NCBI GenBank assembly: GCA_051294905.1
Contig: CM119386.1
Location: 19,220,001-19,284,000, forward strand
From: Botryllus schlosseri
Lineage: Eukaryota
DNA length: 64,000 bases
Reading direction: 5' to 3'
The position numbers and the translations under genes are program-made. Shown piece after piece: positions 1,232-42,200 of this stretch. The first letter of the stretch is position 1. Each line of letters opens with the position of its first letter. The notes under the pieces are model-generated. The model was given only the letters and a program-made list of their open reading frames with translations. It was not told the origin of the DNA and did no database searches.

Positions 1232-2479
1232 ATGGAAGCCGAAAATCCCAGTCACAAAGTCGGAAATAGCACATTGCCTTCACCGCGCCATACCGACGAC
1301 AGTGAAACTGTTTGCGAGAAAGCATTCAGTTCCGAAAACGCAAGAATTGGACACGTGAAAATCCATACGGGAGAGAAAGAGCATGAGCGTGACAAATGCG
1401 GGAAAGGTTTTGTGCAAAAAGTCCAACTGAAGAAACATTTGCGTGTTCACACTGGAACTAAATATCACAAATGTGCTGTATGCGGTGTGGGATTTGCGCA
1501 GAAGTCTGCCCTCAAATATCATTTGTCAATCCACACTGGAGTGAAAGACCATAAGTGCGAAGTATGCGGGATGGGCTTTGTGTGGAAGTCTTTACTCAAG
1601 TATCATTTAACTATCCACACCGGAGTGAAAGACCATAAGTGTGCTGTATGCGGTATGGGATTCCGTCTGAAGTCAAATATGAAAAAGCATACGAAGATTC
1701 ATTCTGCCGCAACAAAGTATGAGTGTAATATATGCGGTATGGGATTCCGTCTGAAGTCATCTATGAAAAAGCATACGAAGATGCATTCTGCCGCAACAAA
1801 GTATGAGTGTGATATATGCGGGACCGGCTTTATGAAGAAGTCTTTACTCAAAAATCATTTAAGTATCCACACCGGTGAAAATGACAATAAGTGTGATGTA
1901 TGTGGGCTGCTTTTTGTGACAAGCAGTCGACTGAAACGTCATTCGTTGATTCACAGGAGATTGAAAGAATACGAGTGCTATCTTTGTGGGAAGTCGTTTC
2001 GACAAAAGTGTAATTTAAAAACCCATGCGCTAGTTCACTCCAACGTCCAACAATACCAATGCGAGATATGCGACAAAAAATTTCGTTACAAAGCACAGTA
2101 CGATCGACATCTCGAAGATCATATCGGCATCCGAAAGCATGAATGTTCTATTTGCGGCAAGAAGTTCGGTCACAGCAAGAACTTGAATTTGCACCTAAAA
2201 ATCCACTCTACTGTGAAATCCCACGTCTGCGAGATTTGCGGAAAAGGATTTGCTCGCCGTGGTCACTTGGAATACCATTTGAAACTTCATTTTGGAATCA
2301 AAGAACATGCGTGCCAGTTGTGCGGAAAGGAATTCTGTTTCAAGTTTCAGTTGAAAAGTCATATGCTGAGGCACAGCGACGTCAGAGAGCATCGCTGTAT
2401 GATATGCAACAAGCAATTTCGTCGCGCGGCAGGATTGAGGACGCACATTGGTAGGCACAACGGGACGGAATGTAATTAA
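1232..2479 (+). CDS. C2H2 (Kruppel-type) zinc finger protein, 415 aa, single-exon ORF
   Basis: 12 intact CxxC-x12-Hxxx-H fingers with TG(E/V)K-like linkers, plus 2 degenerate N-terminal fingers lacking the first Cys. No effector domain is visible. An upstream exon cannot be excluded. Confidence 0.9.
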   Translation: MEAENPSHKVGNSTLPSPRHTDDSETVCEKAFSSENARIGHVKIHTGEKEHERDKCGKGFVQKVQLKKHLRVHTGTKYHKCAVCGVGFAQKSALKYHLSIHTGVKDHKCEVCGMGFVWKSLLKYHLTIHTGVKDHKCAVCGMGFRLKSNMKKHTKIHSAATKYECNICGMGFRLKSSMKKHTKMHSAATKYECDICGTGFMKKSLLKNHLSIHTGENDNKCDVCGLLFVTSSRLKRHSLIHRRLKEYECYLCGKSFRQKCNLKTHALVHSNVQQYQCEICDKKFRYKAQYDRHLEDHIGIRKHECSICGKKFGHSKNLNLHLKIHSTVKSHVCEICGKGFARRGHLEYHLKLHFGIKEHACQLCGKEFCFKFQLKSHMLRHSDVREHRCMICNKQFRRAAGLRTHIGRHNGTECN

Positions 2480-6250: not shown

Positions 6251-9200
6251 TCAAACTCTCAATTGCGTCGCGATCTGCAGCATGCTCTTCAGACCCGGCA
6301 TGAACGCGGAAATCTCGGAAAAGTTTGAGTTCGACACGATCTGCGTGTGCAGGCGAAGACCGCCGGCTAGATCTCCAGAACCGATGGACTGCGCGAGTTG
6401 ATGCAGGCCCGTGACTATATGCGGTGATAGCTGAAATGCGTAATGTAAGTTATTGAGAGCCATATGGTGGATAAGGCGAGTGTGTTCTCACGGTGTTGGC
6501 ACGCAATTTGTCGTACAAGAATTCCATCCTACGTTCGCAATCATCCAGTTTCCTTTTCATTTGCTGCAGATTGAAAACAAATAAAAAACGTCAGTCAGAG
6601 GCGGTCAAAGCAGTCGATGTTGGTGCACAAGGAGAAGTAACATTGTAACATTTCGCAAAGATGTCAAAACTACTTCAAGTGGAATTCGAAAACGTCGGTC
6701 TGGGAAGTATTCAGGTAATTTTAATAAGGAGATTTGGTCCAGGTGTCGTGAACTTTTAACAGTAGATCGGAGATGTCTACATTGTAAGTTGCATGGTGCG
6801 GCTATTCAAATCACTGCGACAGCACAAAAAGTGGGATTTTGGAGTATATATATTCGGCTACCGCAATACAGATGCTATTTCACGTATTTGTTTCGACACT
6901 TTCACTCACAAATGTGATCCAAAAATATCTCAAAACTACCTTCTACTTCACAAAATATCGAGTGTAAAAAGTGAGTGGATTTGCACAAAAAAATTGTTGA
7001 GCATCAGAGCACAAATCATAACTGCTCGAGTAACTAGCACAAGTAGGAAAACCCTATACAAGTACTCAGAAAAATTAAAAGTACTTTGATACTGACTACA
7101 TCTGATAAGAACAGACTCAATCGGATATAAACAAGCACAAAATAACAGATTTGAATAGTATATTCATATTGAAAGGAACCCGAATATTTTCGGCTGACGA
7201 TTACCCCTGACGAGTGCCAGCCGAAAATATTCGGGTTCCTTTCAATATGAATATACTATTCAAATGTGTAATTTTGTGCTTGTTTATATCCGATTAGAGT
7301 TTGTTCTTATCAGATGTAGTCAGTATCGAAGTACTTTTACAAGAGATTCTTAGAGACACAGAACTTCAATATACAATTGAATAGTATATTCTTATTGGAA
7401 TGAATCCGAATATTTTCGGCTGACGATTACCCTAGACGAGTGCCAGCCGAAAATATTCGGGTTCATTCCTATCGGTAATGGTCATTAACCGTTTCAAAAA
7501 ACGCTTGGCTACTAGCTGTCGCCAAGCTCATTAATGACTGTTGAAACGACGTTGAACTAATGCCGCAAAATCCTTCAAAAAGACGAGTTACCGGATTAGC
7601 AGCGCTGGCCGAACAGCGCTTGATGAGCCCTTCGAATTGCGTTTGCAAAATCTGATGTTCCGCGGGGATGGGAGCTTTCGGCATGTCCTTTGCGGCTTTG
7701 GTGGGAAGAGACGGAGCAGGTGCCCGTACCTAAACAGACAGACAGACATTTCATTTTCAAATTGTGATTTTCTTCAAAACATTCACCTTCATTTTCAAAT
7801 TGTGATTTTCTTCAAAACATTCACCGACGATACATATTAGCGAGAACAAACAATACGACACAGTGACGGAATTTGATGACCTTGTGGTGGAGAGTACCAG
7901 TACTCTAATTTGAGCAAAGTAAGCTACTCTAGCGAGCCGACGATACCTGCACTACACCACCAAAAATCTCGACAACGGTGAAATCAACTAGTTTCGGACA
8001 AATGCTCGAAAGGTGTGACTTGAAACAAAACAACAATACAACCGCACGTTATAGGAGCTGAACTTCAAGCTACACACTTGCACGCAAATAGCCTTCATAA
8101 ACAAAGACAAGGGGGCATCGGTTCAACAACAAACAATCGTTCCAGTTCTATATAGAGATTGTTGGTGATTGGCAGCGGAATAGTCTATAAGTCCTTAACT
8201 AATTGTTGACAGAAGAAATCTAGACAGCGTTGCTACGATCCGGTCACATCCTTCGTGAATTCTTACAATTCAACGTAAACGTAGATGTCACAAATAACCT
8301 TAGATTAGCAACAGTCCCTTCTTGAGTAAGAAATATCGAAATCACAACCATTATAAATATCAGCGAGTCTGCGGTCCCGTCTGAAAATATCATTTTTACT
8401 CGTTTTCTGAGACCCCGTGTTGCGTCAGCCACGCTGAATATTTAAATTTAATTTGCTATCTACTATTTCGCTGTGGGCCTACAGTAATTTGGTTGATAGG
8501 CTGGCTTCATGAAGACTTTACAATTAGTTTTGAAACTATAATTTCCGTTGATACTATAACTCATACTAGAAAGGGGCATTTAATTTCAGTGCTTGAAAAC
8601 AATGTCTCTTACTACTAGACGCAAGTCGTTACAACTAATACTTAATTCAGCCTTGACTACTCGAATCATTTTGACCAGCCCTAGTCACAATTCAAAAGAC
8701 GTGACTCGGAAGAATTTGCGCTATGCTGATTTTCGATTTCAATTTGCAAACCGGATTCGAATTAATCGGATTTATCAACCCCAATTACAGCCTGTAATTA
8801 AAACATGGTCTCTAGTAAAATTCCAGGCACTGAATCTACACCATAGCCACCACCCGGCTCTACACAATACCTCGTTGGCAAAATCACTCTCTTCCGTTAC
8901 CTCCGAAGACGTGTTCAAGCCATCCTGACAAGTACATGAAGCATGAAAATGCAATACATTCAAAATCGTATCAAACAAAGATGCATGTCAAATAAATTCA
9001 CTCGATTGTACCTGGTGACCGGCCGGTGCCCCGGGCGGATTCTGCTGCATGGCGTACGGCATGTTGTTAGCATGGGGCTGGTTCGGCATCATCGGTGCCA
9101 TAGGCGCGGCCGCTGGCTGCATGGGGGTCATGAAGTTGTAATCTTGAGGTTGATACGACGGTACGCTTGTCTGTTTATAAACGGAGACAATTTAATTGGC

Positions 9201-12200
9201 GACACTGAAATTTGAGTTCACACACACACGCAAATTAATAACAGTTGTGTAAATCCTTGCGACAATCGCAAGAAAATGGTACACACGATTTTTGGTAATT
9301 AAAGTATATAAGCTGGTGAATAAGACAAAGATTAATATGTCCAGCTCCGATAAACTGTTTGAATATTATGTTCAAAGTACCACAGTCATGTACATAGTTG
9401 ATGCATCAAAGATTCAAGTTAGCACGCTGGCAGCATACACAAACAATTAATCACCAAAGTTGTAAAAGCTATTCAGCACAAGAGGGGTGAAGGAGTGTTT
9501 AAATCTCTCCAATCGAACTGAGAAACAAAGATTTGAAAATAGTGAATGAAATCAGTATAAACAAATTGGTATTGAAAATATCAAATAACATACGAGCATA
9601 CGAGTAAATACTAGATCAGCGGTTCTCAACCGGGGGTCCGCGGACCCCTAGGGGTCCGCGAAGCAATTTCAGGGGGTCCGCGAGACCTCTAAATTTTCAG
9701 AATGGTTGATAACCTTTTTTTTAATTTGAGAAAGCATGAGGCAGTTTCGCACCACAACTGGTAAAACCTCATGACTCATATCAGCATAATAATCGTCTGA
9801 CATCAACTATCGTAGTGTCGAAATTCATTTTCATTGCCAATTTTCCAATAACCTGCTAATAGAAACATATTGCTGTTTAGAGACGCTTTTTTGGGGTTTG
9901 TGGAAAAAAACATGAAGATAGTAACGTCAATCAGGGTGACTTCGTAATGTCTGCGAAACCTTCTCGATTTGACGTTGTCAGTCTCATCAAATTAGTGACC
10001 AGTGGCTTGAAATAAAATTTCCGAAGCATTTCCCTAATTTGTCCCATTGCCGGAATTGAAACCTCGCCACCAAGCCCATTATATCCTGTAATATACATAA
10101 CCACTATTTGAACAGCTTCTTGAAGGTACAGAACTTCAATATACTATTGAATAGTATATTCAGATTGAAATGAACCCGAATATTTTCGGCTGACATTCGT
10201 CATAAATTGGACAATGATACCAGCTCTTAAAGCTTGGCTATCAGATTTGGCGCATTCTTATTGCGGATGCGCTATCAAAAAGGCTGGTTTTTTGATGAAC
10301 AAGGAGTGTTTCGTTGCTATCGAAGCATCACGCTCCAACCCTGCCATTCATATCACCAGTTATATTGGTATGCAGCCTTGTCTTGTTAATGTTTAATTGT
10401 TCATGGTCGAAAATATTTCCTCGTAAATATATATATGTAAACCCGAACAGAACAAGTCGTTTCATGACAGTCTTTATCAGGTTGGAAAACTTGGATCCAT
10501 TCTTCGGCGCACAAAATTTGTCTATACTTTTAGATTAGGATTTTTCACTTTGACGGTAGAAACTCTCTGCGGGTCAATCAAAATGCCGTCGTGGGCCGAA
10601 TCCGACCCGTGACCCTATGCTGCCCGTCCCTGCGCTAGATGCTGGGCGTGATATGTTCATAAAATATATGTTTCCTCATTTTGGTGTCATAAATGTTGCG
10701 ATCACACCATAAGTATCTTCAGAAGCGTTATGCGTTAATATTGCATTAGCCTCCATCTATCTTTGCGGAAATGGTTTCCGGATCTCCTCGTTCATATCAA
10801 AACGAAGACGCGGATTTTCAAGATACGACCTCGTACTTCAAGAAATACAGCAGCAAAATTAATAAAATAATAAAAGGCTACCAATTTCTACATAAATAGC
10901 ATCATGTTATTTTCAAGAATAATCATCATTTTGCTGTTTATCACAAGCCTACAGTTCATATTTGCACGTAACAGATGAAGGTTGCACCATAATAGAGCTA
11001 AAATTGAACTAAACCTTGAGGGGGTCCGCGAGAGTCCGTGACGGTCAAAAGGGGTCCGCGAAGCCAAAAAGGTTGAGAACCACTGTACTAGATGACGGAT
11101 CGAGAGACTGCATAACCTACAACCAATATTCGAGCAGAAAATTATTACAGAATTTTGGACGACACCACAAGCACCAAATAATCAACATTTGCATGACTGC
11201 AAAAATGAAGACAGTCAAATCTAAGAAATGACAAATCCCCTACTCCACCAGTAAAATGTGTGGAATGCGATTGAACGGAAAATTTTCATCACATGCACCA
11301 GATAAAATACATGCAATGGTCAACGAATTTGCTTCTAGGTAAGTACTGTGTATGCTGAGGTGTTAGTCTTGAGATATATACCGTAGAGTCAAGTGTACAG
11401 TTCAATCTCAAATTGTTTCACTGCAGCATAGAGTACGATACACATGGAGGCTGGCAGTCGCACTTCTTGAAACGTATCCTTCCCTACATTGAATCTTTTA
11501 ATTCTAGCCTGTAAGTCGACATTGTTTGGTGTACGTACGATGTCGGATATTGAACAGCTTCATGCTTTCGAGATCGCGTGGACGACGATTGAAGTAGCCA
11601 AGCAATATGCCTATTACTTTTACGAGAATCAAACCTCTAACTCGATCAATTTTGGTCGGTTGATCGCAGCTTCAAATAAACAGAGTGGAAGAACTTCAGA
11701 CACATGCATAACACGATTTGGAAAATAAAATTTTGATTTGTTCAAAGTTCAAACATTGAGTCTTGCGGCAAGTTGTGAGAAGCAGATGGGCATTTTTCAT
11801 GATCTTGTTCATAGCTGAATTTCAATAGAAATAATTTAACATTTGACAGTAATCAGAGCTGGGCAAAACGAGCACCTGGGAGATTCGAGTCTGAGCCGAG
11901 TATTAAGATCTGAGTGAAGTATTCGAGTATGTATTATTTTTGGTAAATGATGCCACTTACATGATATCCAAAATAACTTCGTATTACGATGCTAAGGTAG
12001 ACCACAGTCAATCAAAGTATCGCGGCCCCAATGGTGGGAATAGTCGTAAAACTATATTTTTCTCTGATAAAATATTACTAGTAGAAGAGACCATTGGAGG
12101 TACTGAACTTTGGAATATCTTTTCTGCTGACACTCATCAGGGGAAAACGTCAGCAGCTGGTAGAGAATTCAAAAGAACATTGTATCTCAACAGTCGCATT

Positions 12201-15200
12201 ACCAGGGTTGTAATGCCTCGAGTCATGAGTCTGACTCAGACCACAAATTTTTGGTGACTCGATTCATTTTATCAAATGCGCAAAATGACTCGCCTCTAGT
12301 CAATATATGTATTGAACTGAAAACTGATCAGTGAAGGCTAGCTATGACTCGGAATCGACCCTCAACTAGCTGACTTGGACTTGAATTGAAAATGACTTGA
12401 CTTGAGTCAAACTATAACAGAGAGATTGACTTGTGACTCGGAACCTTGTGACTTGGTTACAACCTGGCATATTAACAATTATTATGACACCAGCAACGGC
12501 ATAAAGATTCGAATGATCATACAAACAGACTGTTTAAGCTCAATCTACTATTTCTTAACTGTTATTTTGAAAAAGCCTAATCTAAAAATAGGAAATGCGA
12601 ATCTTTATGCCCGTGACGTCATATTTGGTGATACAACTGTTGATATAGAAAGTTATGTTCAATTCTTCACTAGTTGCTGACGAGTGTCAGCCAAAAATAT
12701 TCGCGATTTACTCCATTAAATTTACTTTACTCTTGATAAAAAACATCGATTCTCAATACAAGACTCATTACAATTGATACTCGAGTCCTCAAATCGTTAT
12801 GCCCAGCTCTAGTCGTAATCACTGATTTCGGGGTCGATTTCGACAACGTGATTAAGAACATATCGATGGATCGACAATCCGTCATCACTTGTACATCCTC
12901 CTGCGACGTTTGCTCCACAGTGAAAGGCAAGTCTCCGCTTCTTTTCCCAAACGGAGACAGCGGCTTAAAATAACTGGCCATTTTGGACATAATCCCATCG
13001 CCGGGTTCGTCCTTGTCAATAAACGGAATGTTAATATTTTCAAGGTCTACATCGCACACGACGAAGCCGAAAAACCTTTCTATCTGACGGCGGGGGCATC
13101 GCCACGGCGGAGTTATATGCCGTGGTGACTGGCAGTGGTCCGAAATTCGTCACGTCTGATTGCTGGGAAAAGGTTCAGTGAATCAACACATGACTCCCGG
13201 TTTACAGTATTCCAGTGAATTCGAAACTTGATGAATTTGGCATTTCATCGCCCTAATCCCTTATCCACAACACTAGCCTAGCCTAACTCCCAAGCACAAC
13301 CTAACCCTAACAAGAGTGACAATTCACCAATTGCCTTACTCACTGGCACAACCATTCAGTATATGCAATATATTTCCAAGTGATTGTCAGTCAGTCTGAT
13401 GTCTGTCATTACCAATGGGTCGTAACTGGTGGGCCACGGTTCACTTTGCATTTTACGTCGAGCAATTCGATGTGGGCCAAAGTGCTATTTTGAAAATTGT
13501 TAGATGATAAATTCTTTTTCGTTTTGTTCTTTTATTCCAGTAAATAACATATTCTGTTGCCAAATTTTTTCAACTTCAGTAAACTTCAGTAAAAAGAGTT
13601 TTGTTACGGCGATGTAAAGGGCACAATGCGATTTTACAGAACGGCAGCGGTAAATCTGTACAGTAACGCATCATTAGATTGCATTATGATCAAGATGATA
13701 CAAAATTATATTAAAACATTTAACGAATATGAACCGTAACTACCAGGAGACACTGTCAGACATATCATTCACTAAGCATGATACGCTGCATGCTTCACAC
13801 CACGTTTGTGCTAGCTTAGGATGAAAAGCTCGCCTACGTTTGATCACATATGCACAGATCAATGAAGAATGCTGTGCATTAGAAGCCACCGCATATGAAA
13901 TGATACAATTGCATGCACCGATTTTGTGAGGGTGAAAGCTGTGAACTGATTTATGATGATATTACATGAAAGGGGGTTCAATGTTGAATCTTACATTGAA
14001 CTATGATAGTAAACTATGATAAAAACTACTTCTTCAAGAATCAGGATTAAAAACTGGGTGTATGAGAGTCTTGACTCGTAGGGGTTATGATCACAATTGC
14101 CAGAACAAAGTGCAATAAACAAAGATCCACCGTCATAGTATGAACAAGCTCCAGGCTCATGTCGTAGAACAAGGAGCCTAGTGAGTTGAAATATGCCCGA
14201 CAATTATCTGTGACGGCATATTTCAGATTAACAATGCCGCAAAATGAAGTCAAAACGAAACCATCGGTGTTTTCATCACCAGCACGGTAAAATATGATGG
14301 TTTAGTCGGTAGATATTGCGTCTATACAAAGTGCACTGATATTGAGCTTTAATAAGTGGGAAAATTAAACCAGGAAGAAACAATTTCATACAGGAAGCAA
14401 AAAACCACAGTCCAGAGCCCCTCGGTACAAAGTTAGGAACACTATTCTACTGTGAGCCACAAAACATTGCAAAAAAGCACACCACATTATTTTCATAATA
14501 GCATCCATTGCAATGATACACAACTTGAAGAGTTATCTCCGATCAAGAGTTATCGGCAAGCTACAATGTGAATTTCATGGTGTGTAATACTCATTGTTAT
14601 ATCATACTTTGCCAGATTGGTTTCACTTTTGAATCTGATTTCCTTTATTGTGCCGATAACTCTTGTAATGATGCACCCGAAAAGTCTTCAAGTTACGTTA
14701 CGATAAATGTACTATTGGAATGGATGTTATGAAAGCAATCTGCCACCTCGGTACCACGAACCAACTATTTACACCACTACATGAGATCCCATGCAAAGAA
14801 CCAAATAGTGATCAATAAAACAAAAACAGAAAAACACGTCCATGTACCAAGACCTGTGCATTACAACCGGTTGCCGGGCACACAACGGACGGTATTGAGA
14901 TATTAGCAATCAGACATTGAGTACCATGCGAGTCTGTGGTCAACATGCTGTTACAGTAGAGACCCCCTGAAATCTGACAAGAGGGCAGAAATTAGGGACA
15001 ATAATCGACAACGTGGCGCAACAGCAAGATTTCCTACGATGGAGCAATAGCTGATGCAGAACTATTTTTTGATGCAACCCTTGAGCAACAAACCACAGTG
15101 GAATGCAGATGTAGTGAGTAATGAAGTGCTTGATACTTGGCAGCCAAACAGCTTACTTATTAGGCCTATCTTCTATACCTTGTTTGAGTATGAACTTTTT

Positions 15201-18200
15201 AAATGGGGTTTGTATCATTTCCAAGATTGAAATCGTCGTAACCATCGCTCAAATGAGACATGTCTTCAGACCACATTTACTGACGTTTGCTCTTGACGAG
15301 AGTAAGCCGAAAAGATCGGAGTGGACTAAATTTGGCAATATGAACGTATTGTTTGGGATTTTCACTTCTACTGAAGATTATCGATGCAGCACCTTGGATC
15401 TTGTGTAGCATAAACTAGTTTTGGGATGTTTCTATCACTTTTACGAGTGAATTGTTACCGTAACCGGCGAAAATACCCCCTGAATTAAGGTAACCGAAGA
15501 TATTTTTAAAACTTGTCCTATTCGTTAGTGTCATAAGTGATTTTACGTTAGTCTTGAATATACATGTTACAATTTCAAAACTAGTCACCCCCGATTAACG
15601 ACTGAAAGTATGTGATCCCTCAAACAAATCAACTGTGCGAAACTATTGGGTATGTTAAGACCATTCAATTTCTACACCCACTTGAAGTAGTTTTAATAGA
15701 GTAGAATCTACTGCGTTACTTCTGCTTGCGCACTAGGGCTGTTCAAAAATGACCTTTTTTCCTGAATCTTGCTGATTACTTGATTAAATCGTTAGGTTGA
15801 CTTAAAAAACGACGCACACCAAATTTGAATTCATTCCAACCAATAATCGCGGATTTCGTAGAGTTTGAAAATTTTGAATTTGCCAAAAAATGCAAAAAAA
15901 AATTTTTCAAATTTTTCTGCCAACCCCATGAAATTGTTGCGCGGTCTTCAAAAACGATGCAGAAGCGGAGTTATTCAAGTTTTTTTATGGTAATTCTGGG
16001 ATGATCCACCAATCAAGGATAATCCCAGAATTATCAAAGAAAAACTGAAATAACTCCACTTCTACGGCTTCAAATTGAGTCAAATTTGTTTTGCATCGTT
16101 TTTGAAGACAGCACAACAATTTCATGGGGTTGGCAGAAAAATTTGAAAAATTTTTTTTTGCATTTCTTGGCAAATTCAAAATTTTCAAACTCTACGAAAT
16201 CCGCGAATATTGGTTTGAATGAATTCAAATTTGGTGTGCGTCGTTTTTTAAGGCAAACTAACGATTTAATCAAGTAATCAGCAAGATTCAGGAAAAAAGG
16301 TTATTTTTGAACAGCCCTATTGCGCACACATGCCTATATGTCTGAGGACCTAACTATCATGTCTCAAGCACACGTCTCGAATGGATCAAACGGTGTTATT
16401 ATGCAATCGTAAACCAACAACATACAACCGTGCATGACAAATCGTGAGTATGAAATCCGCATGAGAATGGTTGAATCCGTGCATGGTTCTTCACAATGTA
16501 CAGAGCAATCTTCAACATACCTTCTTTTTTCTCGGCACCCTGTTGGGATCGACGGCAGGCGGGTCGTTCCAACCGCCCTGGTCTGGAATAGCGGATTCCG
16601 TGGGTATGCTGATGGGCTGTCTGGGTGGTGCTCCGTACGAGATATTAGGCTGGAGGGGTTGGCTTGTCACTGGCATGCTGGGTGCCGGCGCCGGTGGGAA
16701 TTGTGGCACACCTGGTTGCTGAAGCTAAGAAAAACGGAAGACTATGCACAACGTCCATCGATGACATCATGATTCAAAATTTCTGTATGAATCTAAGTAA
16801 TCGAGTTATTGAAGAGACTGTTGAACGCATAAAGGTCAATAAACAATGGAATACTATTTTCATCTTGAAATAAACCCAATATTTTCAGCTTGCACTAGTA
16901 GAGAATACAAAAGAACATTGCATATGAGCAATCGTATCACCAAATATGACCAGACGTGTTTCTGAGCTCATTTGATATCTCTAGTCTGTTTACGAACGTT
17001 CCGCTGCATGAGACTATTGATATTTGTGCCAACGCGCTGTACGGTGGTAAGTTACCACCACCATCAATCCCGCGTAACGTCTTTGTTGAACTTTTACAAG
17101 CGGCAACTTGCTCCGGCAACTTGCTCCGTGGAATTTAGCTTTAACGAGGTCATGTTTCGCCAAATAGACGGCTTAGCCATGGGTAGTCCCCTGGGACCTA
17201 TTTTGGCCAACATTTTCGTAGGGTATTACGAGGGCGAGCTTCTCTCCCAGCGTGAGTCCGCCAAACCACTATTGTACCGCCGATACGTAGATGATACATT
17301 TGTCATTTTCAGGAATGAATCGGAGTGTGACCAATTTCTCATTCGCTTAAACTCGCTTCACACGGCCTTGCAATTCACAATAGAAAAAGAAAGCAATAAC
17401 TCATTATCATTTCTGGACGTATTAGTTGAAAAGCGCAATACCAACAAATTTGAAACGTCTGTTTTCAGGAAACCGACATTCACAGGCCAATACCTTCGCT
17501 GGAATTCATTTAGTCCTCGGCGCAGAAAAATTAACCTCATAGGCACACTCGTGCATAGAGCGTTGATGATATGTTCGGGTAACAAACTGAGTTTAGAACT
17601 TGACTACATCCGAAAAATCTTACTGGATAACGGTTACCCTGAACACGTCATCAGCCGCGGCATGGAGAGGAAATTAACGCAATTCATCGCAGAAAAACGA
17701 ACAGAGCCCACCGCACGAACAATAAAAGATGTTTATATCCATCTACCTTGGATTGGCCCCATTTCCACCCGCTTTGAAAAACAATTGATTTCTGCTGTCA
17801 GTAAGTGTTACGACACAGTCAAAACCAATGTGATTTATACAACAACACAACTGCTCCCTTCAACACGCAAAGACATGCTTCCTGCACTTCAACAAAGTAA
17901 TGTAGTGTACGAATATAGGTGCCACTGTGATTGTGGCTACGTGGGAAGAACGTCAAGACGTCTGCAGGACCGCATAAACCAACATGTCCCCAGATTTATC
18001 AGAACACGCTCAGTGAAAAGCTCACCCTTAACTCATCCACTTAAGATTGATGCTGATCGATCAAAGGCCATTAATTCTGCCATCGGCAAACATCTGTTGG
18101 ATAATCCGATTTGTGCGAATAATTATCGAGACGACCGATTTCGAATCGTAGGGCGAGGTCGCACACAATTCCATTTGTGTGCCTTGGAATCAACTTTTAT

Positions 18201-21200
18201 CAAAATACACCAACCAAAACTCTGTCAACAAAAGGAGTTCATGTACCACCTAAAAATAGTACATTGAACGCTCTCTCTTTCATGCTGGTGACGTCATATT
18301 TTGTGATACGATTGTTGATATACAATGTTCTTTCCAATTCTCTACTAGTTGCTGACGATTACCCCTGACGAGTGTCAGCCGAAAATATTCGGGTTCATTT
18401 CAATATGAATATACTATTTAAATATGATTGTTGATATACAATATTCATTCAATTCTGAACAAGTTTCTTACGATTACCACTGACGAGTATCAGCCGAAAA
18501 TGTTCGGGTTGATCTCAATATGAACACAGCATTGAAAATCAAGTAGGCTGCCTGAGCCATATGATTCCGAGTCGAGTATTAGGATTTGAGAATCAAGTAT
18601 TCGAGTATCACTCATTACTAGGGCAAGTTTTTGTTGCAGTTAAATCCGTGGAAAGTTGCATTTATTCATTTGTTTTCGAAAAAAGTTGCAGAAGTTGCAT
18701 TTTGACCACATTTTGCTCGGTTGACTAAAAAAAAGGTCAATTTTCCGGCTCAGCTCCCGAAATACCCGTAAAAGCGTTACTTCGGTGCTGATTTACGGTG
18801 TTTCAGTCGAATTTGGCCATGTATTTCACCAAAATCGAAAATACCTTCATGAAAAATCGAAAAAGTTGCATTAAAAATATGGACAAAAGCTGCAAAAAGT
18901 TGCACTATAAGATTCCTTCAAACAGCTTTAAACAGCATTCTACATATCTTACAATTATTTAGGAAGCTGCCGGAAGCTGTAAAAAAAAGTTGCAAAAGTT
19001 GCAAAAACTAGCCCTACTCGTTACGATGTTATAGAACGACGTTGATGTCAAGCAGTGACCAATCTTTACAATGTTCATGAAGTGATACAAAGCAGTCATT
19101 GTTCTGAATTATGAGGCTATTCTTGCTAACGTGAGATGGATATCATTGTCCTTTTGACCGCAAAAAAGATATTTTAATCTGGGCGTCTTATGTTTGTTGA
19201 ATTTGAATTTGTGTACTCGAACACTCGACTAAACTGTAAGGATAATGCTCAACTTGGAAAATCAAATCCCCGGGTACCCATTGTTGAATAGTTGAATTCT
19301 CAAACCCTCAAAGCAGCATAGCATAGATTTGGATGAAAATAACGCATCACAAGATCTCACGGAGTGTCAGGATAACAAAGAAAACTGGTACGTACTGGTG
19401 CTGGATTGTATCCGTTAACAGGGACGACTGGAGGACCGGCAGGCGTCATCGGCTGTTGCGGTGTGTACAAATTGGTCGGGGCTGAAAGAATATCGTATAA
19501 AATTATGATGCTTGATATTCCCCGAACCATTGTTCACTTGAACATAAAAAATTGTGTCAGAAAATACAACTAAAAAATGGCAGCCAAAATGTGTAGTCAA
19601 GTCAAGCACCCGAAACGTTAATAATCGACTGATGGCCATAATTGAGTAACGTACAATCTTTGAAATTTAAAATCACACAAATTCAAAAGCGATGTAACAA
19701 CAGTATTATAATAATGCTACAATTACAACTACAAACGGTTTGCCACGTGCATCATAAACAATCGACAAGTGAAACATTTCTGGCAAAAAACACAGTTCCT
19801 GCACTTCACAGAACAGGTGGACACACCCACACCGACAGTGTTCTGACAGACGTAACTCGCATCACACATTCACCGTGCGCCACTCCAAAAATCTATCCAC
19901 AAAATTTGTGCGGCTATAAAAACCAGGAGCAACTTTGTGACGAGATACCTTGACGGTGAACATAGTAGATATCATTCTGCGGCATTCTCGTAATCTGTCG
20001 ATGCGACCACACTGGGACAGAAAGACAATTGAGGAGAGCAGTGCATCCTGCAGGTCAGAGGTGGTCAATAACAATAGACCACTTTTTCACAGAAATCAAG
20101 CGGGTTTCGCGTGCTCGCGCTATGTACGTCCTACTCAACTAAGTCAAGTGATAATGATTTATGACTACTTCCTGCCTTCCACTCCAACTCTGCACCATTA
20201 CGCTATCTTGTAGGTGACGCCAAGACTCACTCTGTAGCTAATCTAATTGGGCAAATACTACTGGATCAATCGTTACGACCATTCATACTACAGTTGTTCG
20301 AACATCAGCATAAAGTAACAGAGTTCAAACCTCACATCGCTAATCGGAAAATCTACAAAATTTACTCACCGGCATAACCTGGTCTAGCTGCAGCAGGTCT
20401 GCGGTTTGATTTGTAAGGATTGTTTGAAGGCGAATTCGATCTGCAGGGCGACACCGGTCTCTCGGGCCGTCTGGGTACGGCCATCGGATTCATGGTGTTC
20501 ATCTGCGACGGGAAGAGAAAGGATAGAAACACCAGATGCTGCGACGTTTTCACTTGATCTGTGATTCCTACATACGACTGATTTAAAACATGCGTCATGC
20601 TGTCAACTTGGTTTGCTGGCTACGGGAAAATATCTATAAAAATGGGAAAAACTGGAGAGGCTTTGAATACAAAGAAAGTTTAACCTATCGAGAGGGCATA
20701 GTGAATGTCTATCTGTCCATCTCCAGCAGAGCTTGGCAGCAATCAAGATTGAAAAGACAAATACCTGTTTAGGTTGTTGATATGCTGACGGGTTGTACGG
20801 CTGTCGTCCTGCAAACAAAGCAACGTCGTTTAAACGTTTCCGATCAGATTAGAGATAGGGTCGTGTAAAGTCGGGTACTTGAGGGATTCTACGTGAAGTA
20901 ATAGGCTTTTGTGTATCATCCATAACAGTGCGGAAAGTTCAGATGCGAACCATTGATGCGGCCACAAAGAATACAGCGCACATTCTACACCAGTGGTTCC
21001 CAACGTGGGCGATTAGGCGGTCTAGGGGGGCGAAAATAACGAAGGGGCGATAGGGGGGCAAAAACGGACAAAGGGGGCGATAGGGGGCGAAAACAACAAA
21101 GGGGGCGATAGGGCGTTAAAACGGCTATATTGAAGTCGGGACCGTAACTACCGCACCCAAACCCCCCGATTGGGGGTGGGGGCTTGAACTCGATGGGGGC

Positions 21201-39200: not shown

Positions 39201-42200
39201 CCGCAGATTCCATCTTCTTCTGACAATACTCGGCAAACTGATTCGAGGTCAAGGTGCTTTGAAGCTCTTCGGAACGTTTCACAAAGCTACTCTCTGTCAC
39301 CACCTGCATCGATAAAGCAAGCTGTAACTGAACGGCCCAGAACGGACAATCGCTACCGTGCATCCATATTTGATGACTAGTGGATAAATTGAGACGAATA
39401 AACCTCACAAGTCATCATAAAAGATACATACACAATTGCATAACAGATTTTGTAATTACAAAGGTCAAATATCAATCAAGCGCAGCGCGGAACATAAAAT
39501 TGGGTTTGGCCAAGTATATTTCAACGTGAGCTTCTCGGAGGTACAGAGCTTCAATATACAATTATATAGTATAATCATGACAGAGGTAATAGGCAGCAAC
39601 TAACTAGTACAGAATTGGAATGAACATTGTATATCAACAATTGTAACACAAAATATGATGTAACCAGCATGAAATTTTGAATAACCGGGGCAAAGAGAGA
39701 GCTTACGTTTTATGTACTATTTTTAGATGGTACATGAATTCCTTCTGTAGGTACAGACTTGGTTGGCAAAACATATGGCATGGGATGAAATAAGGGCGAG
39801 CCTTTCGAAAGGTAAAAATAGAAGGTCTTAATGAAAATTACAGATTTTCTTCAGGACTAACCAACACCAAGGTATGACAATAAAGTAAATTTATTCATGA
39901 TTGCTAGGGCTGTGCACAATTATTCGAGTACTCAAATGTGAGACCAGTAGCCTATATATGGAATAACTTGAGTTCAGTAATGAGAATAGATTCAAGATAA
40001 CAAGCACCAAGAGCTATATTTTATCGACGAAAGATGTACTGGGGCAAGAAATGCATGTAAGACGATATAGATATCAGATACAGATACCATTATTATATCA
40101 TAGGTTGGCTATATAGGAATAAAAAAAAACAGGGGAAATCACAAGTTGCCCTATGTGCCCACTAATGTCACCGAGTAAGATAACTAAAGCCTAAACTAAA
40201 TTGTGGCTTTCCTTATCAAGAGCGGCCCTGGGATATTAGATTAGTAAAGTCAGTAATGAGCGCTACACGGGCAAGAAATTGTATGACTAAACCGAGCCAA
40301 AACGCAGAAAATTCAATGGTCTTCGCTGCTATTCCGTCACTTTTATTTCCCATTATTAATAACTTGTTAACATTGTTATAGCGCAGATTTAGAGATGGTG
40401 AACTGGTGCAATATTTCAGTTGGCAAAGCCAAAGCTGATACTCAGTCTCTGCCCTACGCACGGTTAAATGTCTGGTGCGGTACTACATGTACCTGTTGAA
40501 TTGTAACTGTCTTTACGGGTACTTGATTCGCAGCAGGCGCCTTCTGATTTTCCACTACCACGAGTTTGCCCCCAAACTGAAATCGTAACCAAAGAATCGT
40601 TAACAGACGACGGAAATAGGCTGCTGGAAATACAACGAAATGATTACCGAAAACGTCGCGCTACAAGTCTTGTAGATCCACTTGGGTGGGTTCTTCAGTG
40701 GATCCGCCACTACTTTTTTGGGGGTGGGAGCTTGCTGGACCGGGGCGTCCATCAGGGCGCTTCCGCCGAAGGACTCTGCGAGCTGAGATGGACAAAATTA
40801 AAAGCTTATTAACGGAAATTGATATGACGATGATCTTGATTCTGTTTGTGAGTTATGGCAGTGGTCGCAAATTTTTTTTGCAAGGGGACTGGTAAAATCC
40901 AAAACCTTTGAAAATCAAAATTAACCAAAACGTAATTTAGAAAAACGTGTGGACGTTAAAAGCAAACCGGAAACTTCAATTCAATGAGATATTTGCTACT
41001 GGCTTTTTGATGTTTCATTTTCAATTGATGTTCTATTGCTTAAAACCACTAACTTGATTTTGTTTGTTCGGTTTCTTTTGAAATACTTATGACTTTGCTG
41101 TTTGCTAGCCTCTATGATAATGCCAAAATTCGCTACATTGTACCGTCGACATGTCATGAATTTCGGCAATGGCAACATAGCAATTAGTAAAAATTATCCT
41201 CATTTCATATTCTTATTAGAAATAGCGATGATGCCTAGCACAAACTGTTATCTTTTCGACACCAACATCCGCCAAGCTCCTTAGGTTAAAGGAAAATAGC
41301 CACGGCTGCATGGACCTATTCATCATTGAAGTCAGCAGAGTCAAAATAACCAGACAGTCATTCTTGAACTCTCTCTCTCTTTCTCATTTCCTAGCACCTC
41401 GAAATAAGAGAAAGAGCTCACCGCGTCTTGGCGTTGCTGATTGGGCATTTCCATATCGACTGCAGAACCCCCCATCAGCGAATGAAAGGTGATATTGCCG
41501 TCAAACGAACCTAGCGATATCATAGCCGGATTCCGCGGGCACCATTGTACATCGAAGCACCAATGCGGCGTGCTCGGGACTTCATAAACAATCTGTTAAA
41601 TCAATATTAATTAAAGAGAAATGCGCCAGCCAGGACCTATGAAACGAAAAAGAACAAAAGTGCGATGTACGATTACATACCAGGAACAAGGTACTCGCTA
41701 TTAAGTGTAAAACTGAATATTTGTTGAAAACCCTGATTTTGCTATTACAAACCAGTACACCAATCCTGGGATATAGCCTACGGTATGGTTACATGCTAGC
41801 CATTGACTGCGATGTTAAATGAATATTTGCAAAAAACTGTTGCTTGCCTTGACAAATCCAGACACCTATCCCGATTGTCGTCGCGTAAATAGGGTAAAAT
41901 AAATGGCTTCGGTTACGCCAACCAATTGACGCATGAAGCAGGGCGACTTGTTCAATTGTTGCACTGTTACTTATGCTGTTGACTGATGTTGATATCGGCT
42001 AAAATTAGGCTTGCTGAGAGAGTATTTGAGCCTTTGTGAGAAGGCATTGACAATAAACCAGTTGTACTCCCCCGAGTATTACATACATCTGACCTATGCA
42101 CCCAACAGTGACATGCCAGTATGCAGAAGACTGCAAAGTACAACATCGTGTTTATACGTAGCCAAAGCTAAATCAATCTGTGTGTTTAGATGCCAGGGGA

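What the first reader, a model, noticed from the sequence alone, without database searches (positions are those of the whole stretch)
7076..7339. Hammerhead ribozyme locked inside its own 264-bp palindrome
Seen: an intact minimal hammerhead (7203-7236) sits so that the 17-nt loop holds its helix-I 5' strand and CUGACGA box. The entire left arm is antisense to the rest of the ribozyme (helix II 3' side, GAAA, cleavage site). The outer ~70 bp of the arms are not shared with the other cassette copies in the window, so the inversion extends beyond the cassette. Established: Penelope-like elements carry minimal hammerheads in their terminal repeats and often make inverted terminal arrangements. Inference: this is either a fold-back product of Penelope-type insertion, or a MITE-like mobile family derived from a ribozyme. 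The hairpin would silence the ribozyme, or allow cleavage only in a kinetic window, and would produce long dsRNA inside SEC31 pre-mRNA.
Basis: partly seen in the sequence, partly recalled or inferred. Interest (0 to 1): 0.8.

Follow-up and report, generated by a model that had tools for sequence, protein, structure and literature searches.

The report
Fold-back palindrome at a dead Penelope tail
The 264-bp palindrome is real, but it is a one-off inverted duplication that pivots on a short inverted repeat inside a dead Penelope-like retrotransposon tail carrying a hammerhead-type motif; it lies antisense in a SEC31 intron and is most likely a neutral rearrangement scar, not a mobile element or a regulated ribozyme.

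Summary
Observation confirmed. The arms are 7076-7198 and 7216-7339 (5 mismatches, 1 indel) around a 17-nt asymmetric centre. Either strand folds as RNA into one hairpin of about -190 kcal/mol.

The centre and right arm carry the hammerhead-like unit of a Penelope-like element (PLE) family. It has the CUGACGA and GAAA boxes, the UC cleavage site, a 4-bp helix I and a palindromic helix III. Helix II is not a hairpin, and Rfam finds no hammerhead.

Public DNA runs show the inner ~70 nt is extremely abundant (summed word depth ~10^6 against ~25 for unique DNA). The outer arms are single or low copy, so this is not a MITE-like family.

The left boundary lies inside an older, unrelated repeat (E, 6934-7104). 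The right arm ends with an inverted copy of E's last 29 nt. The duplication therefore ran past the PLE tail into neighbouring DNA. That fits a fold-back or template switch seeded at the motif's own 6-7-bp inverted repeat, not two-strand insertion.

A second, similar palindrome follows at 7341-7472. SEC31 is on the minus strand, so the ribozyme-sense strand is antisense to the pre-mRNA; only the hairpin would be in it. RNA reads show no cleavage ends.

First readers of this scan noted other Penelope palindromes elsewhere in this genome. Interest is low to moderate.

The parts
6934..7104 (+). Older dispersed repeat 'E'. Its terminus reads CAGATGTAG...AAGTAC on the minus strand. Its last 29 nt (7076-7104) form the outer end of the left arm.
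   Evidence: Colinear, ~73% identical to 44712-44882(-), and also related to 15106-15451(-). Homology runs across 7075/7076 without a break and stops at 7104 in all copies.
7076..7198 (.). Left arm of palindrome 1. It comprises the E end (7076-7104), a low-copy segment Q (7105-7147), the inverted start of the PLE tail U (7148-7191), and the box GGCTGAC (7192-7198), which is the upstream strand of the short inverted repeat.
   Evidence: The X1 contig 6963-7178 joins it to its unique left flank.
7199..7215 (+). 17-nt asymmetric centre: linker GAUU, helix I 5' strand ACCC (7203-7206), CUGACGA box (7207-7213), G10.1 (7214), U (7215).
   Evidence: Same order as in the canonical units at 18351-18400.
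7216..7339 (+). Right arm. It comprises GCCAGC (7216-7221; family consensus GTCAGC), C11.1 (7222), GAAA (7223-7226), AAUAUU helix III palindrome (7226-7231), C17 (7232), helix I 3' strand GGGU (7233-7236), the rest of U to ~7265, Q' (7266-7310), and an inverted copy of the E end (7311-7339).
   Evidence: The X1 contig 7255-7382 and the X6 contig 7231-7371 carry it together with the spacer.
7341..7472 (.). Second palindrome with the same pivot. Left arm 7341-7424 is an inverted longer tail variant (U-A). Centre 7425-7441 has the core mutated to UAGACGA. Right arm 7442-7472 is cut to ~30 nt in this assembly but is full length in runs X6 and X12.
   Evidence: Joint 7341(-)->7474 in X6 (depth 83) and X12.
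7592..7729 (-). SEC31 exon with AG acceptor and GT donor, encoding ...[27 protein letters not shown].
6564..7591 (-). SEC31 intron (1,028 nt) that holds repeat E and both palindromes.
6492..6563 (-). SEC31 exon encoding [24 protein letters not shown]. The last coding exon ends at the stop codon at 6251.
   Evidence: An SRA1-type cluster is only a lead for the C-terminal exon.
16950..18541 (+). Reference copy of the family. A 5'-truncated PLE ORF (RT with YVDD, then GIY-YIG) runs to 18267, followed by the 3'UTR and two tandem 116-nt units carrying the motif.

Best explanation
The palindrome is a locus-specific inverted duplication, made by a fold-back or template switch. It is seeded by the 6-7-bp inverted repeat that every tail of this Penelope-like family carries: GCUGAC upstream, GUCAGC just before GAAA, 17 nt apart.

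Inferred history:
1. A 5'-truncated PLE tail of a rare GCCAGCC subvariant lay in minus orientation, 43 nt from the end of an older repeat E, in a SEC31 intron.
2. A nascent DNA strand that had just copied the first half of the short repeat re-annealed to the second half on the other template strand. This could be a replication U-turn or break-induced fold-back.
3. It then copied back 124 nt, through the tail, the 43-nt segment and 29 nt of E.
4. It returned to the original template at a short AAGTAC/T-rich match at the end of the neighbouring tail.

Shown here: the anatomy, the copy numbers, the boundary inside E, and the orientation relative to SEC31. Inferred: the order of events and the enzymology.

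Consequence: the hammerhead-type motif at this locus is dead weight. Its strand is antisense to SEC31. In any + strand RNA the 124-bp stem would bury GAAA, the cleavage site and helix I. The SEC31 pre-mRNA would carry a ~124-bp near-perfect hairpin, with no demonstrated function.
For: - The arms were copied from one another or from one template. Both carry the same rare variant at mirror positions 7175 and 7239, where ~99% of family copies differ.
- The pivot is exactly the family's native short inverted repeat. Canonical copies read 3'UTR-GCTGAC-17 nt-GTCAGCC. Most family copies in DNA and RNA have the 3'UTR left of 7193, shown by loose ends, 243 of them RNA reads.
- The outer arms are not family sequence. 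Summed word depth is 12.7 (7068-7109) and 37.9 (7278-7319), against ~10^6 for 7194-7235 and ~25 for unique flanks in X1. X6 shows the same pattern.
- Repeat E runs colinearly across the left boundary and ends at 7104. Its last 29 nt recur inverted at 7311-7339. So the copy ignored element borders.
- Each arm sits with its own flank in contigs of X1, and the right arm does so in an independent sample, X6.
- A second palindrome with the same pivot lies next door.
- My own derivation from the sequence: with one proofread primer mismatch, the U-turn model reproduces the + orientation of the centre and the GGCTGAC/GCCAGCC asymmetry.
Against: - No read or contig crosses the high-copy centre, so the join itself is taken from the assembly.
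- The X1 left-arm contig has half the depth of the right-arm contig (12.7 vs 25). That could mean the left arm is the younger, polymorphic one, which is the opposite of my polarity. Holes at 93% likeness in a genome with ~5% allelic divergence prove little.
- Both palindromes share the rare C at 7217/7443. This needs a shared source, duplication or gene conversion.
- The microhomology proposed for the return switch is short and AT-rich.
- A reverse-transcriptase snap-back cannot be separated from a DNA-polymerase event on sequence alone.
Confidence: 0.58

Rival explanations
1. Ordinary Penelope head-to-head insertion. Both target strands are cut and extended, as shown for the Anolis element PAc in vitro. 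The two cDNAs anneal by the GCTGAC/GTCAGC microhomology and give two 5'-truncated tails back to back. The template RNA would have to be a read-through transcript carrying Q' and the E end.
For: - PLEs typically carry an inverted 5'-truncated copy (PMC8557442), and PAc cuts and extends both strands (PMC11167929).
- Two other head-to-head PLE pairs lie in this window: 16840-16950(-)/16950-18541(+) and 12117-12202(-)/12582-12775(+).
- Arm length from the cleavage site is 107 nt. That is near the ~85-92 nt between the hammerhead cut and the reverse-transcription start in PAc.
- This model explains the GGCTGAC/GCCAGCC asymmetry without a later mutation.
- It may well be the origin of palindrome 2, whose arms are pure tail sequence.
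Against: - Staggered target cuts give a direct, not an inverted, duplication of flank.
- The arms hold 43 nt of low-copy DNA plus 29 nt of repeat E, which is continuous with the rest of E on the left only.
- A template RNA with that 3' end would have to come from this very locus.
Confidence: 0.17
2. cDNA snap-back during target-primed reverse transcription. The PLE reverse transcriptase, after copying the upstream box, folds the cDNA 3' end onto the downstream half of the short repeat. It then copies its own cDNA and runs on into the primer (target) DNA.
For: - Same pivot and equal arms.
- A snap-back from a + oriented original with GCCAGC reproduces the asymmetry and the loop orientation exactly (own derivation).
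- Running into the primer strand would explain flank inside the arms.
Against: It makes the right arm the original and the left arm the copy. Yet the E end in the left arm is seamlessly continuous with the body of E, and no remainder of E lies to the right of the complex.
Confidence: 0.1
3. Assembly artefact. The two arms belong to separate, oppositely oriented PLE copies and the repeat between them was collapsed.
For: - No contig or read bridges 7179-7254.
- PLE inverted structures are known to trouble assemblies (PMC8557442).
Against: - Both arms exist as distinct sequences (they differ at 6 sites), each attached to its own unique flank in X1 contigs. The right arm is also found in independent sample X6.
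- The window has no N.
Confidence: 0.06
4. A selected element. The hairpin is kept as a source of double-stranded RNA or small RNAs against the PLE family, or as a gated ribozyme.
For: - The inner arms are 95-99% identical to a family with tens of thousands of copies.
- The hairpin is very stable on both strands.
- The right arm is retained in a haplotype ~5-6% divergent.
Against: - No intron reads at all over the unique parts in the one RNA run sampled.
- No pile-up of read ends and no editing-like changes beyond family variants.
- The arms have drifted ~4-5% apart, about the allelic level.
- The neighbouring palindrome has lost most of one arm in this assembly.
Confidence: 0.05
5. MITE-like mobile palindromic family derived from a ribozyme.
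For: The central 96 nt occur twice, 226 bp apart, as a direct repeat (91%) with a shared rare variant.
Against: - The outer arms are at single or low copy depth in X1 and X6 and absent in X12.
- The boundary lies inside repeat E.
- No target-site duplication at 7075/7340.
Confidence: 0.02

Closest known systems
Minimal, dimer-type type I hammerhead motifs in the pseudo-LTRs of Penelope-like elements (Cervera & de la Pena 2014, PMC4209133; Lunse, Weinberg & Breaker 2017, not readable here)
   Same: - Position just after the ORF and 3'UTR of an RT + GIY-YIG element.
- CUGANGA and GAAA boxes, and a UC cleavage site.
- Short helix I (4 bp).
- 1-2-bp helix III with a palindromic loop (AAUAUU) that could pair in a dimer.
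- Very high copy number as solo tails.
   Different: - No 6-8-bp helix II hairpin. Only G-C plus G-C can form in cis.
- The 3' strand GUCAGC instead matches a box upstream of helix I.
- No Rfam hit.
- At this locus the motif is enclosed by a 124-bp stem and lies antisense to the host gene.
Inverted 5'-truncated copies and 'tails' of PLE insertions (Evgen'ev & Arkhipova 2005; Craig et al. 2021, PMC8557442; Frangieh et al. 2024, PMC11167929)
   Same: Two truncated tails head to head. Other such pairs occur in the same window. Arm length is comparable to the distance from the hammerhead to the reverse-transcription start site.
   Different: The arms continue beyond PLE sequence into 43 nt of low-copy DNA and 29 nt of another repeat, in inverted orientation. 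The junction sits on a native 6-7-bp inverted repeat.
Fold-back or template-switch inverted duplications. These include quasipalindrome correction, replication U-turns at short inverted repeats, and fold-back inversions with a short asymmetric spacer. Named from general knowledge, not read here.
   Same: A short inverted repeat with a spacer sits at the axis. The arms copy whatever lies next to it regardless of element borders. The sequence on the far side of the pivot (the PLE 3'UTR) is lost.
   Different: Small scale (124-nt arms). The seed is supplied by a retroelement's ribozyme-like motif. The enzymology is unknown.
L1 twin priming (Ostertag & Kazazian 2001; from general knowledge)
   Same: A retroelement insertion with an inverted 5' part, joined by microhomology.
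   Different: Twin priming inverts element sequence only and leaves direct target duplications. Here flank is inverted and no duplication is seen.

Membership tests
PLE-type minimal hammerhead (Cervera & de la Pena 2014) | Catalytic boxes CUGANGA and GAAA, with a U-H cleavage dinucleotide | tested here: met
   CUGACGA at 7207-7213, GAAA at 7223-7226, U16.1-C17 at 7231-7232. Seven copies in the window against 0 expected.
PLE-type minimal hammerhead (Cervera & de la Pena 2014) | Helix I of 4-5 bp flanking the core | tested here: met
   ACCC 7203-7206 pairs with GGGU 7233-7236. The same holds in the canonical copy at 18361-18394.
PLE-type minimal hammerhead (Cervera & de la Pena 2014) | Minimal helix III with palindromic 15.2-16.2/loop 3, allowing a dimer | tested here: met
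   AAUAUU at 7226-7231 is self-complementary.
PLE-type minimal hammerhead (Cervera & de la Pena 2014) | Helix II hairpin (6-8 bp) closed by G10.1-C11.1, with one unpaired nucleotide after A9 | tested here: not met
   Only 9 nt lie between A9 and G12, giving at most 2 pairs in cis. The hammerhead fold scores +5.2 kcal/mol against -10.5 (canonical copy) or -6.8 (this copy) for competing hairpins.
PLE-type minimal hammerhead (Cervera & de la Pena 2014) | Alternative: helix II completed by pairing GUCAGC with the upstream box GCUGAC (pseudoknot), as earlier follow-ups of this scan propose | tested here: inconclusive
   - The 6-bp complementarity is present in the canonical copies. Here it has an A.C mismatch, because 7217 is C.
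- By the classical H-type pseudoknot rule (recalled from memory), a 1-nt linker can cross a 6-7-bp deep groove.
- No usable covariation among the copies of this window.
PLE-type minimal hammerhead (Cervera & de la Pena 2014) | Recognised by curated hammerhead covariance models | tested here: not met
   No Rfam hammerhead hit at gathering score or at E<=10 on 7000-7600 and 18280-18560.
PLE-type minimal hammerhead (Cervera & de la Pena 2014) | Self-cleavage | not testable with these tools
   The only indirect test was RNA reads of run X23. At ~360x depth over the motif there is no pile-up of read ends at 7232/7233 (table 6). The same absence was reported for the Anolis element (PMC11167929).
Penelope-like element tail | Same unit directly downstream of an ORF with reverse transcriptase followed by GIY-YIG endonuclease | tested here: met
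   - The ORF at 16950-18267 has YVDD and a GIY-YIG-type motif.
- RVT_1 scores 27.6 bits, just under the cut-off.
- The nearest Atlas clusters carry RVT_1 + GIY-YIG.
- The 3'UTR + motif units lie at 18306-18541.
PLE inverted 5'-truncated pair made by insertion | Both arms consist of element sequence and end at element termini | tested here: not met
   The arms include a 43-nt low-copy segment and 29 nt of repeat E. The boundary at 7076 lies inside E.
MITE / foldback transposon family | Many copies of the whole unit with the same ends and target-site duplications | tested here: not met
   The outer arms are at single or low copy word depth in X1 and X6. No other copy in the window. No duplication at the ends.
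Fold-back / template-switch inverted duplication | A pre-existing short inverted repeat with spacer at the axis, and arms that copy adjacent DNA regardless of element borders | tested here: met
   The pivot is the family's native GCTGAC...GTCAGC repeat. The arms cross from the PLE tail into unique DNA and into repeat E.
Fold-back / template-switch inverted duplication | Microhomology at the return junction | tested here: inconclusive
   7326-7339 resembles both the E end and the 3' end of the neighbouring tail variant when compared with 39512-39535 and a paralog contig. The match is short and AT-rich.
Non-LTR retrozyme (tandem hammerhead repeats giving circular RNA) | Head-to-tail tandem units each with a hammerhead | tested here: not met
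   At 7076-7472 the units alternate in orientation. A short direct tandem (2 x 116 nt) exists only at 18306-18541.

The most novel reading that the evidence does not exclude
The short inverted repeat inside this family's hammerhead-type motif is a recurrent, sequence-programmed hotspot for fold-back. With tens of thousands of tails in the genome, it would seed many intronic long hairpins, and perhaps larger palindromes. Their transcripts would feed double-stranded RNA or small-RNA silencing of the Penelope family itself. Two adjacent palindromes with the same pivot here, and unchecked first-reader notes of other Penelope palindromes in this genome, are compatible with recurrence. Nothing here shows small RNAs or selection.
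Probability: 0.1. Interest if true: 0.65.

Novelty: new member of a known kind. Interest (0 to 1): 0.3.

Why it matters
It gives a concrete, checkable example of how a retroelement's own RNA-structure motif can act at the DNA level as a seed for palindrome formation. It also shows that such a palindrome can swallow neighbouring DNA. How the complex inverted arrangements of Penelope-like elements arise is still unknown, and this case argues that not all of them come from the insertion reaction itself. Practically, it warns that 'hammerhead in a host intron' calls need a strand check. Here the host pre-mRNA carries only the antisense, plus a ~124-bp double-stranded stem.

Tried and rejected
- **Rfam:** searched at gathering score over the whole window, and at E<=10 over the palindrome and over the canonical tandem. 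No hammerhead was found. The only hits were generic long-hairpin matches to miRNA precursors far below threshold.
- **Cis-only hammerhead with a 2-bp helix II:** energetically poor.
- **Upstream-box pairing for helix II:** I first rejected it on topological grounds. I withdrew that after re-deriving it as an H-type pseudoknot with G10.1-C11.1 kept. It remains untested here.
- **Literature search for the motif sequence:** none found. The Lunse et al. paper and the supplements of Cervera 2014 are not held.
- **Two metagenome scans for more copies:** none for the 40-nt pattern. Three unrelated GC-rich contigs matched the 20-nt pattern by chance.
- **Search for the remainder of repeat E to the right of the complex, and for an inverted partner of E's terminus:** none.
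- **Target-site duplications at 7075/7340:** none seen.
- **Two-strand insertion as the origin of palindrome 1:** rejected as the main model, because it predicts a direct flank duplication.
- **Copy-number or junction evidence across the centre:** not obtainable. Contigs stop in the high-copy core, and only one read-laying run was allowed.
Full report
**What is there**

The region 7076-7339 is a near-perfect inverted repeat. The repeat finder reports arms 7119-7196/7218-7295 at 97% and 7076-7118/7297-7339 at 95%. A global alignment of the arms (7076-7198 against 7216-7339) shows 5 mismatches and one 1-nt indel. The unpaired centre is 7199-7215, 17 nt.

As RNA, either strand folds into one long hairpin. 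The minus strand gives -190.2 kcal/mol (z = -31.7) and the plus strand -190.7 (z = -31.1).

**The motif**

On the + strand the centre and the start of the right arm read as follows:
- ACCC (7203-7206)
- CUGACGA (7207-7213)
- G, U
- GCCAGC-C (7216-7222)
- GAAA (7223-7226)
- AAUAUU (7226-7231)
- C (7232)
- GGGU (7233-7236)

This fits the boxes, the UC site, the short helix I and the palindromic helix III of the minimal, dimer-type hammerheads described for Penelope-like elements (PMC4209133). It does not fit their 6-8-bp helix II hairpin. Only two G-C pairs can form in cis. A hammerhead-shaped fold scores +5.2 kcal/mol, against -10.5 (canonical copy) and -6.8 (this copy) for competing hairpins. 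Rfam finds no hammerhead at gathering score or at E<=10, either here or on the family's canonical tandem.

Earlier follow-ups of this scan on other windows of the same genome (a sea squirt, by their notes) propose that helix II is completed by pairing GUCAGC with the box GCUGAC just upstream. I re-derived this. If G10.1-C11.1 is kept as a local pair, the six nucleotides between them can pair with the upstream box, and the single U crosses the deep groove as in an H-type pseudoknot. That is sterically plausible by a rule I recall from memory. I could not test it by covariation in this window, so 'intact hammerhead' stays unproven.

In this copy 7217 is C where ~98% of family copies have T. That puts an A.C mismatch in the pairing.

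**The family**

The same unit follows the 3'UTR of a 5'-truncated ORF at 16950-18267. The ORF has a reverse-transcriptase YVDD motif and a GIY-YIG-type endonuclease motif. Its nearest Atlas clusters carry RVT_1 + GIY-YIG. It is therefore a Penelope-like element (PLE). Two tandem 116-nt units lie at 18306-18541.

Further tails lie at 10103-10203(-), 12117-12202(-), 12582-12775(+), 16840-16950(-) and 39581-39766(-). Two of these sit head to head with another copy. That is the arrangement described for PLEs (PMC8557442).

**Copy number from public runs**

I laid contigs of two DNA samples of the species (X1, X6), one of a second label (X12), and raw RNA reads (X23) on 6480-7720.

| Interval | Run | Summed word depth |
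|---|---|---|
| 7194-7235 (core) | X1 | ~970,000 |
| Unique flanks | X1 | ~25 |
| 7194-7235 (core) | X6 | ~3.1 million |
| Unique flanks | X6 | ~83 |
| 7068-7109 (outer left arm) | X1 | 12.7 |
| 7278-7319 (outer right arm) | X1 | 37.9 |
| 7068-7109 (outer left arm) | X6 | 16.5 |
| 7278-7319 (outer right arm) | X6 | 150 |

The tool warns that summed depth is not a copy number. The contrast is still four to five orders of magnitude. So the inner ~70 nt belongs to an extremely abundant family and the outer arms do not. This removes the MITE-like reading.

In most family copies, in DNA and RNA, the sequence left of 7193 is the PLE 3'UTR. This shows as loose ends, 243 of them RNA reads. So the inverted junction is not the family's normal state.

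Mirror positions 7175 and 7239 both carry a variant that ~99% of family copies lack. The two arms were therefore copied from one another or from one template.

**The decisive anatomy**

The left flank and the first 29 nt of the left arm (6934-7104) are one colinear copy of an older, unrelated repeat, which I call E. It is ~73% identical to 44712-44882(-), with the same spacing, and is also related to 15106-15451(-). Homology runs straight across the palindrome boundary at 7075/7076 and stops at 7104 in all copies.

The terminus motif occurs four times in the window against 0 expected: at 7081-7104(-), 7311-7334(+), 15106 and 44712. So the right arm ends with an inverted copy of E's last 29 nt and nothing more of E. 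No remainder of E lies further right.

The duplicated block is therefore: 29 nt of E, 43 nt of low-copy DNA, then the first ~51 nt of a PLE tail up to the short repeat. An insertion reaction with staggered target cuts would duplicate flank in direct orientation. An inverted copy of flank needs a strand that turned back on its own or its sister's template.

**Mechanism proposed (inference)**

Every canonical tail carries GCTGAC, a 17-nt spacer, then GTCAGC. The palindrome's axis is exactly this repeat, in both cassettes.

If a minus-oriented tail of the rare GCCAGCC subvariant lay 43 nt from E, the following sequence would account for the structure:
1. A nascent + strand ending in the copy of that half-repeat anneals to the other half on the parental + strand.
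2. It copies back 124 nt.
3. It returns to its proper template.

Written out, this reproduces the observed order, the + orientation of the centre and the GGCTGAC/GCCAGCC asymmetry, provided the one mismatched base near the primer end was proofread.

The return point would lie in 7326-7339. That stretch resembles both the E end and the 3' end of the neighbouring tail variant. The match is short and AT-rich, so I rate it inconclusive.

A cDNA snap-back by the element's reverse transcriptase gives the same product. But it makes the right arm the original, which conflicts with E's continuity on the left.

**Second palindrome**

7341-7424 is an inverted longer tail variant, followed by a centre with a mutated core (UAGACGA) and a right arm of only ~30 nt. 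In X6 and X12 a unique-depth contig joins the mirror image of 7341-7386 directly to 7474. So there the right arm is full length, and the assembly's haplotype has lost ~55 nt of it.

Its arms are pure tail sequence, so an ordinary PLE head-to-head origin is possible for this one.

Both palindromes share the rare C at 7217 and 7443. This points to a common source, duplication or gene conversion. I could not decide which.

**Host gene and strand**

On the minus strand there are three SEC31 coding segments:
- An exon at 7592-7729, with AG acceptor and GT donor, encoding ...[27 protein letters not shown].
- An exon at 6492-6563 encoding [24 protein letters not shown].
- A last exon ending ...[24 protein letters not shown] at the stop at 6251.

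This matches my recollection of the C-terminus of human SEC31A. The only tool support is an SRA1-type Atlas cluster at score 0.86.

The palindromes lie in the 1,028-nt intron 6564-7591. The hammerhead-sense strand is the + strand, so SEC31 pre-mRNA contains its antisense. The hairpin, being symmetric, would still form.

**RNA evidence (run X23, about 6% of the run read)**

- No reads fall on the unique parts of the intron, and exon depth is only 1-2. There is no power to see the hairpin, editing or small RNAs.
- Over the family core, first mates lie on + and - equally (181 vs 178), while the few exon reads all lie on one direction. If the library is stranded, the family is transcribed in both senses, as expected for passive intronic copies.
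- No position shows a pile-up of molecule ends, so there is no sign of cleavage at 7232/7233. The same was reported for the Anolis element (PMC11167929).

**Weak points**

- No contig crosses 7179-7254, so the join is taken from the assembly.
That may reflect a divergent or deleted allele rather than a young left arm. It is unexplained.
- Arm divergence (~4-5%) is about the allelic divergence seen in the flanks. The event is therefore old and shows no sign of conservation.

**Verdict**

This is a real palindrome, best read as a fold-back or template-switch inverted duplication. It is seeded by the short inverted repeat of a dead Penelope tail and extends into neighbouring DNA. It is not a mobile family, and it is not a ribozyme within the SEC31 transcript. 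First readers of this scan noted other Penelope palindromes on other DNA of this genome. I did not check those.

Noticed in passing
window 18306-18541: Two head-to-tail 116-nt units (last 41 nt of the PLE 3'UTR + motif + ~35 nt), directly after the truncated PLE ORF. This is a retrozyme-like mini-tandem. The second unit has a degenerate upstream box and a broken helix I.
   Followed up: partly
window 16840-16950 (-) next to 16950-18267 (+): An inverted 110-nt tail fragment abuts the 5'-truncated PLE ORF head to head. This is the classical PLE inverted 5'-truncated pair. Its junction is not at the hammerhead repeat.
   Followed up: partly
window 12117-12202 (-) and 12582-12775 (+): Two tails of sister subfamilies lie head to head, ~380 nt apart. 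The + copy (12677) has lost the 13 nt between the two CTGACGA boxes, so it has a single box. The - copy has an 8-bp version of the short inverted repeat that would also pair G12.
   Followed up: no
window 39512-39766 (-): A PLE 3' end copy in which ~37 nt, including most of the hammerhead-type motif, are missing. The longer tail variant continues behind it.
   Followed up: no
window 6934-7104 (+), 44712-44882 (-), 15106-15451 (-): Repeat E, rich in AAGTAC/GAGTA motifs, with terminus CAGAKGTRGT. From memory this resembles Tol2/hAT-type transposon ends; not tested. The copy at 15106-15451 has a diverged hammerhead-type unit inserted at about 15265-15354, and a paralog contig in X6 joins E to a tail. 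E may therefore be a frequent neighbour or target of these tails.
   Followed up: partly
window 7442-7473: Structural polymorphism. In runs X6 and X12 the right arm of the second palindrome is full length and joins 7474 directly. The assembly's haplotype lacks ~55 nt of it.
   Followed up: partly
window 6963-7178 vs 7255-7382: In run X1 the contig with the left arm has half the word depth (12.7) of the contig with the right arm (25). Two haplotypes are visible at 6767-6985. The left arm may be heterozygous or its allele too divergent to be laid.
   Followed up: no
window 1232-2479 (+): An uninterrupted 415-aa ORF made almost wholly of C2H2 zinc-finger repeats, about 3.8 kb beyond the SEC31 stop codon (6251), on the opposite strand.
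   Followed up: no
window 6648-6689: A short stretch of the same SEC31 intron with ~20-fold elevated word depth in X1 and X6. This is another dispersed repeat, not examined.
   Followed up: no
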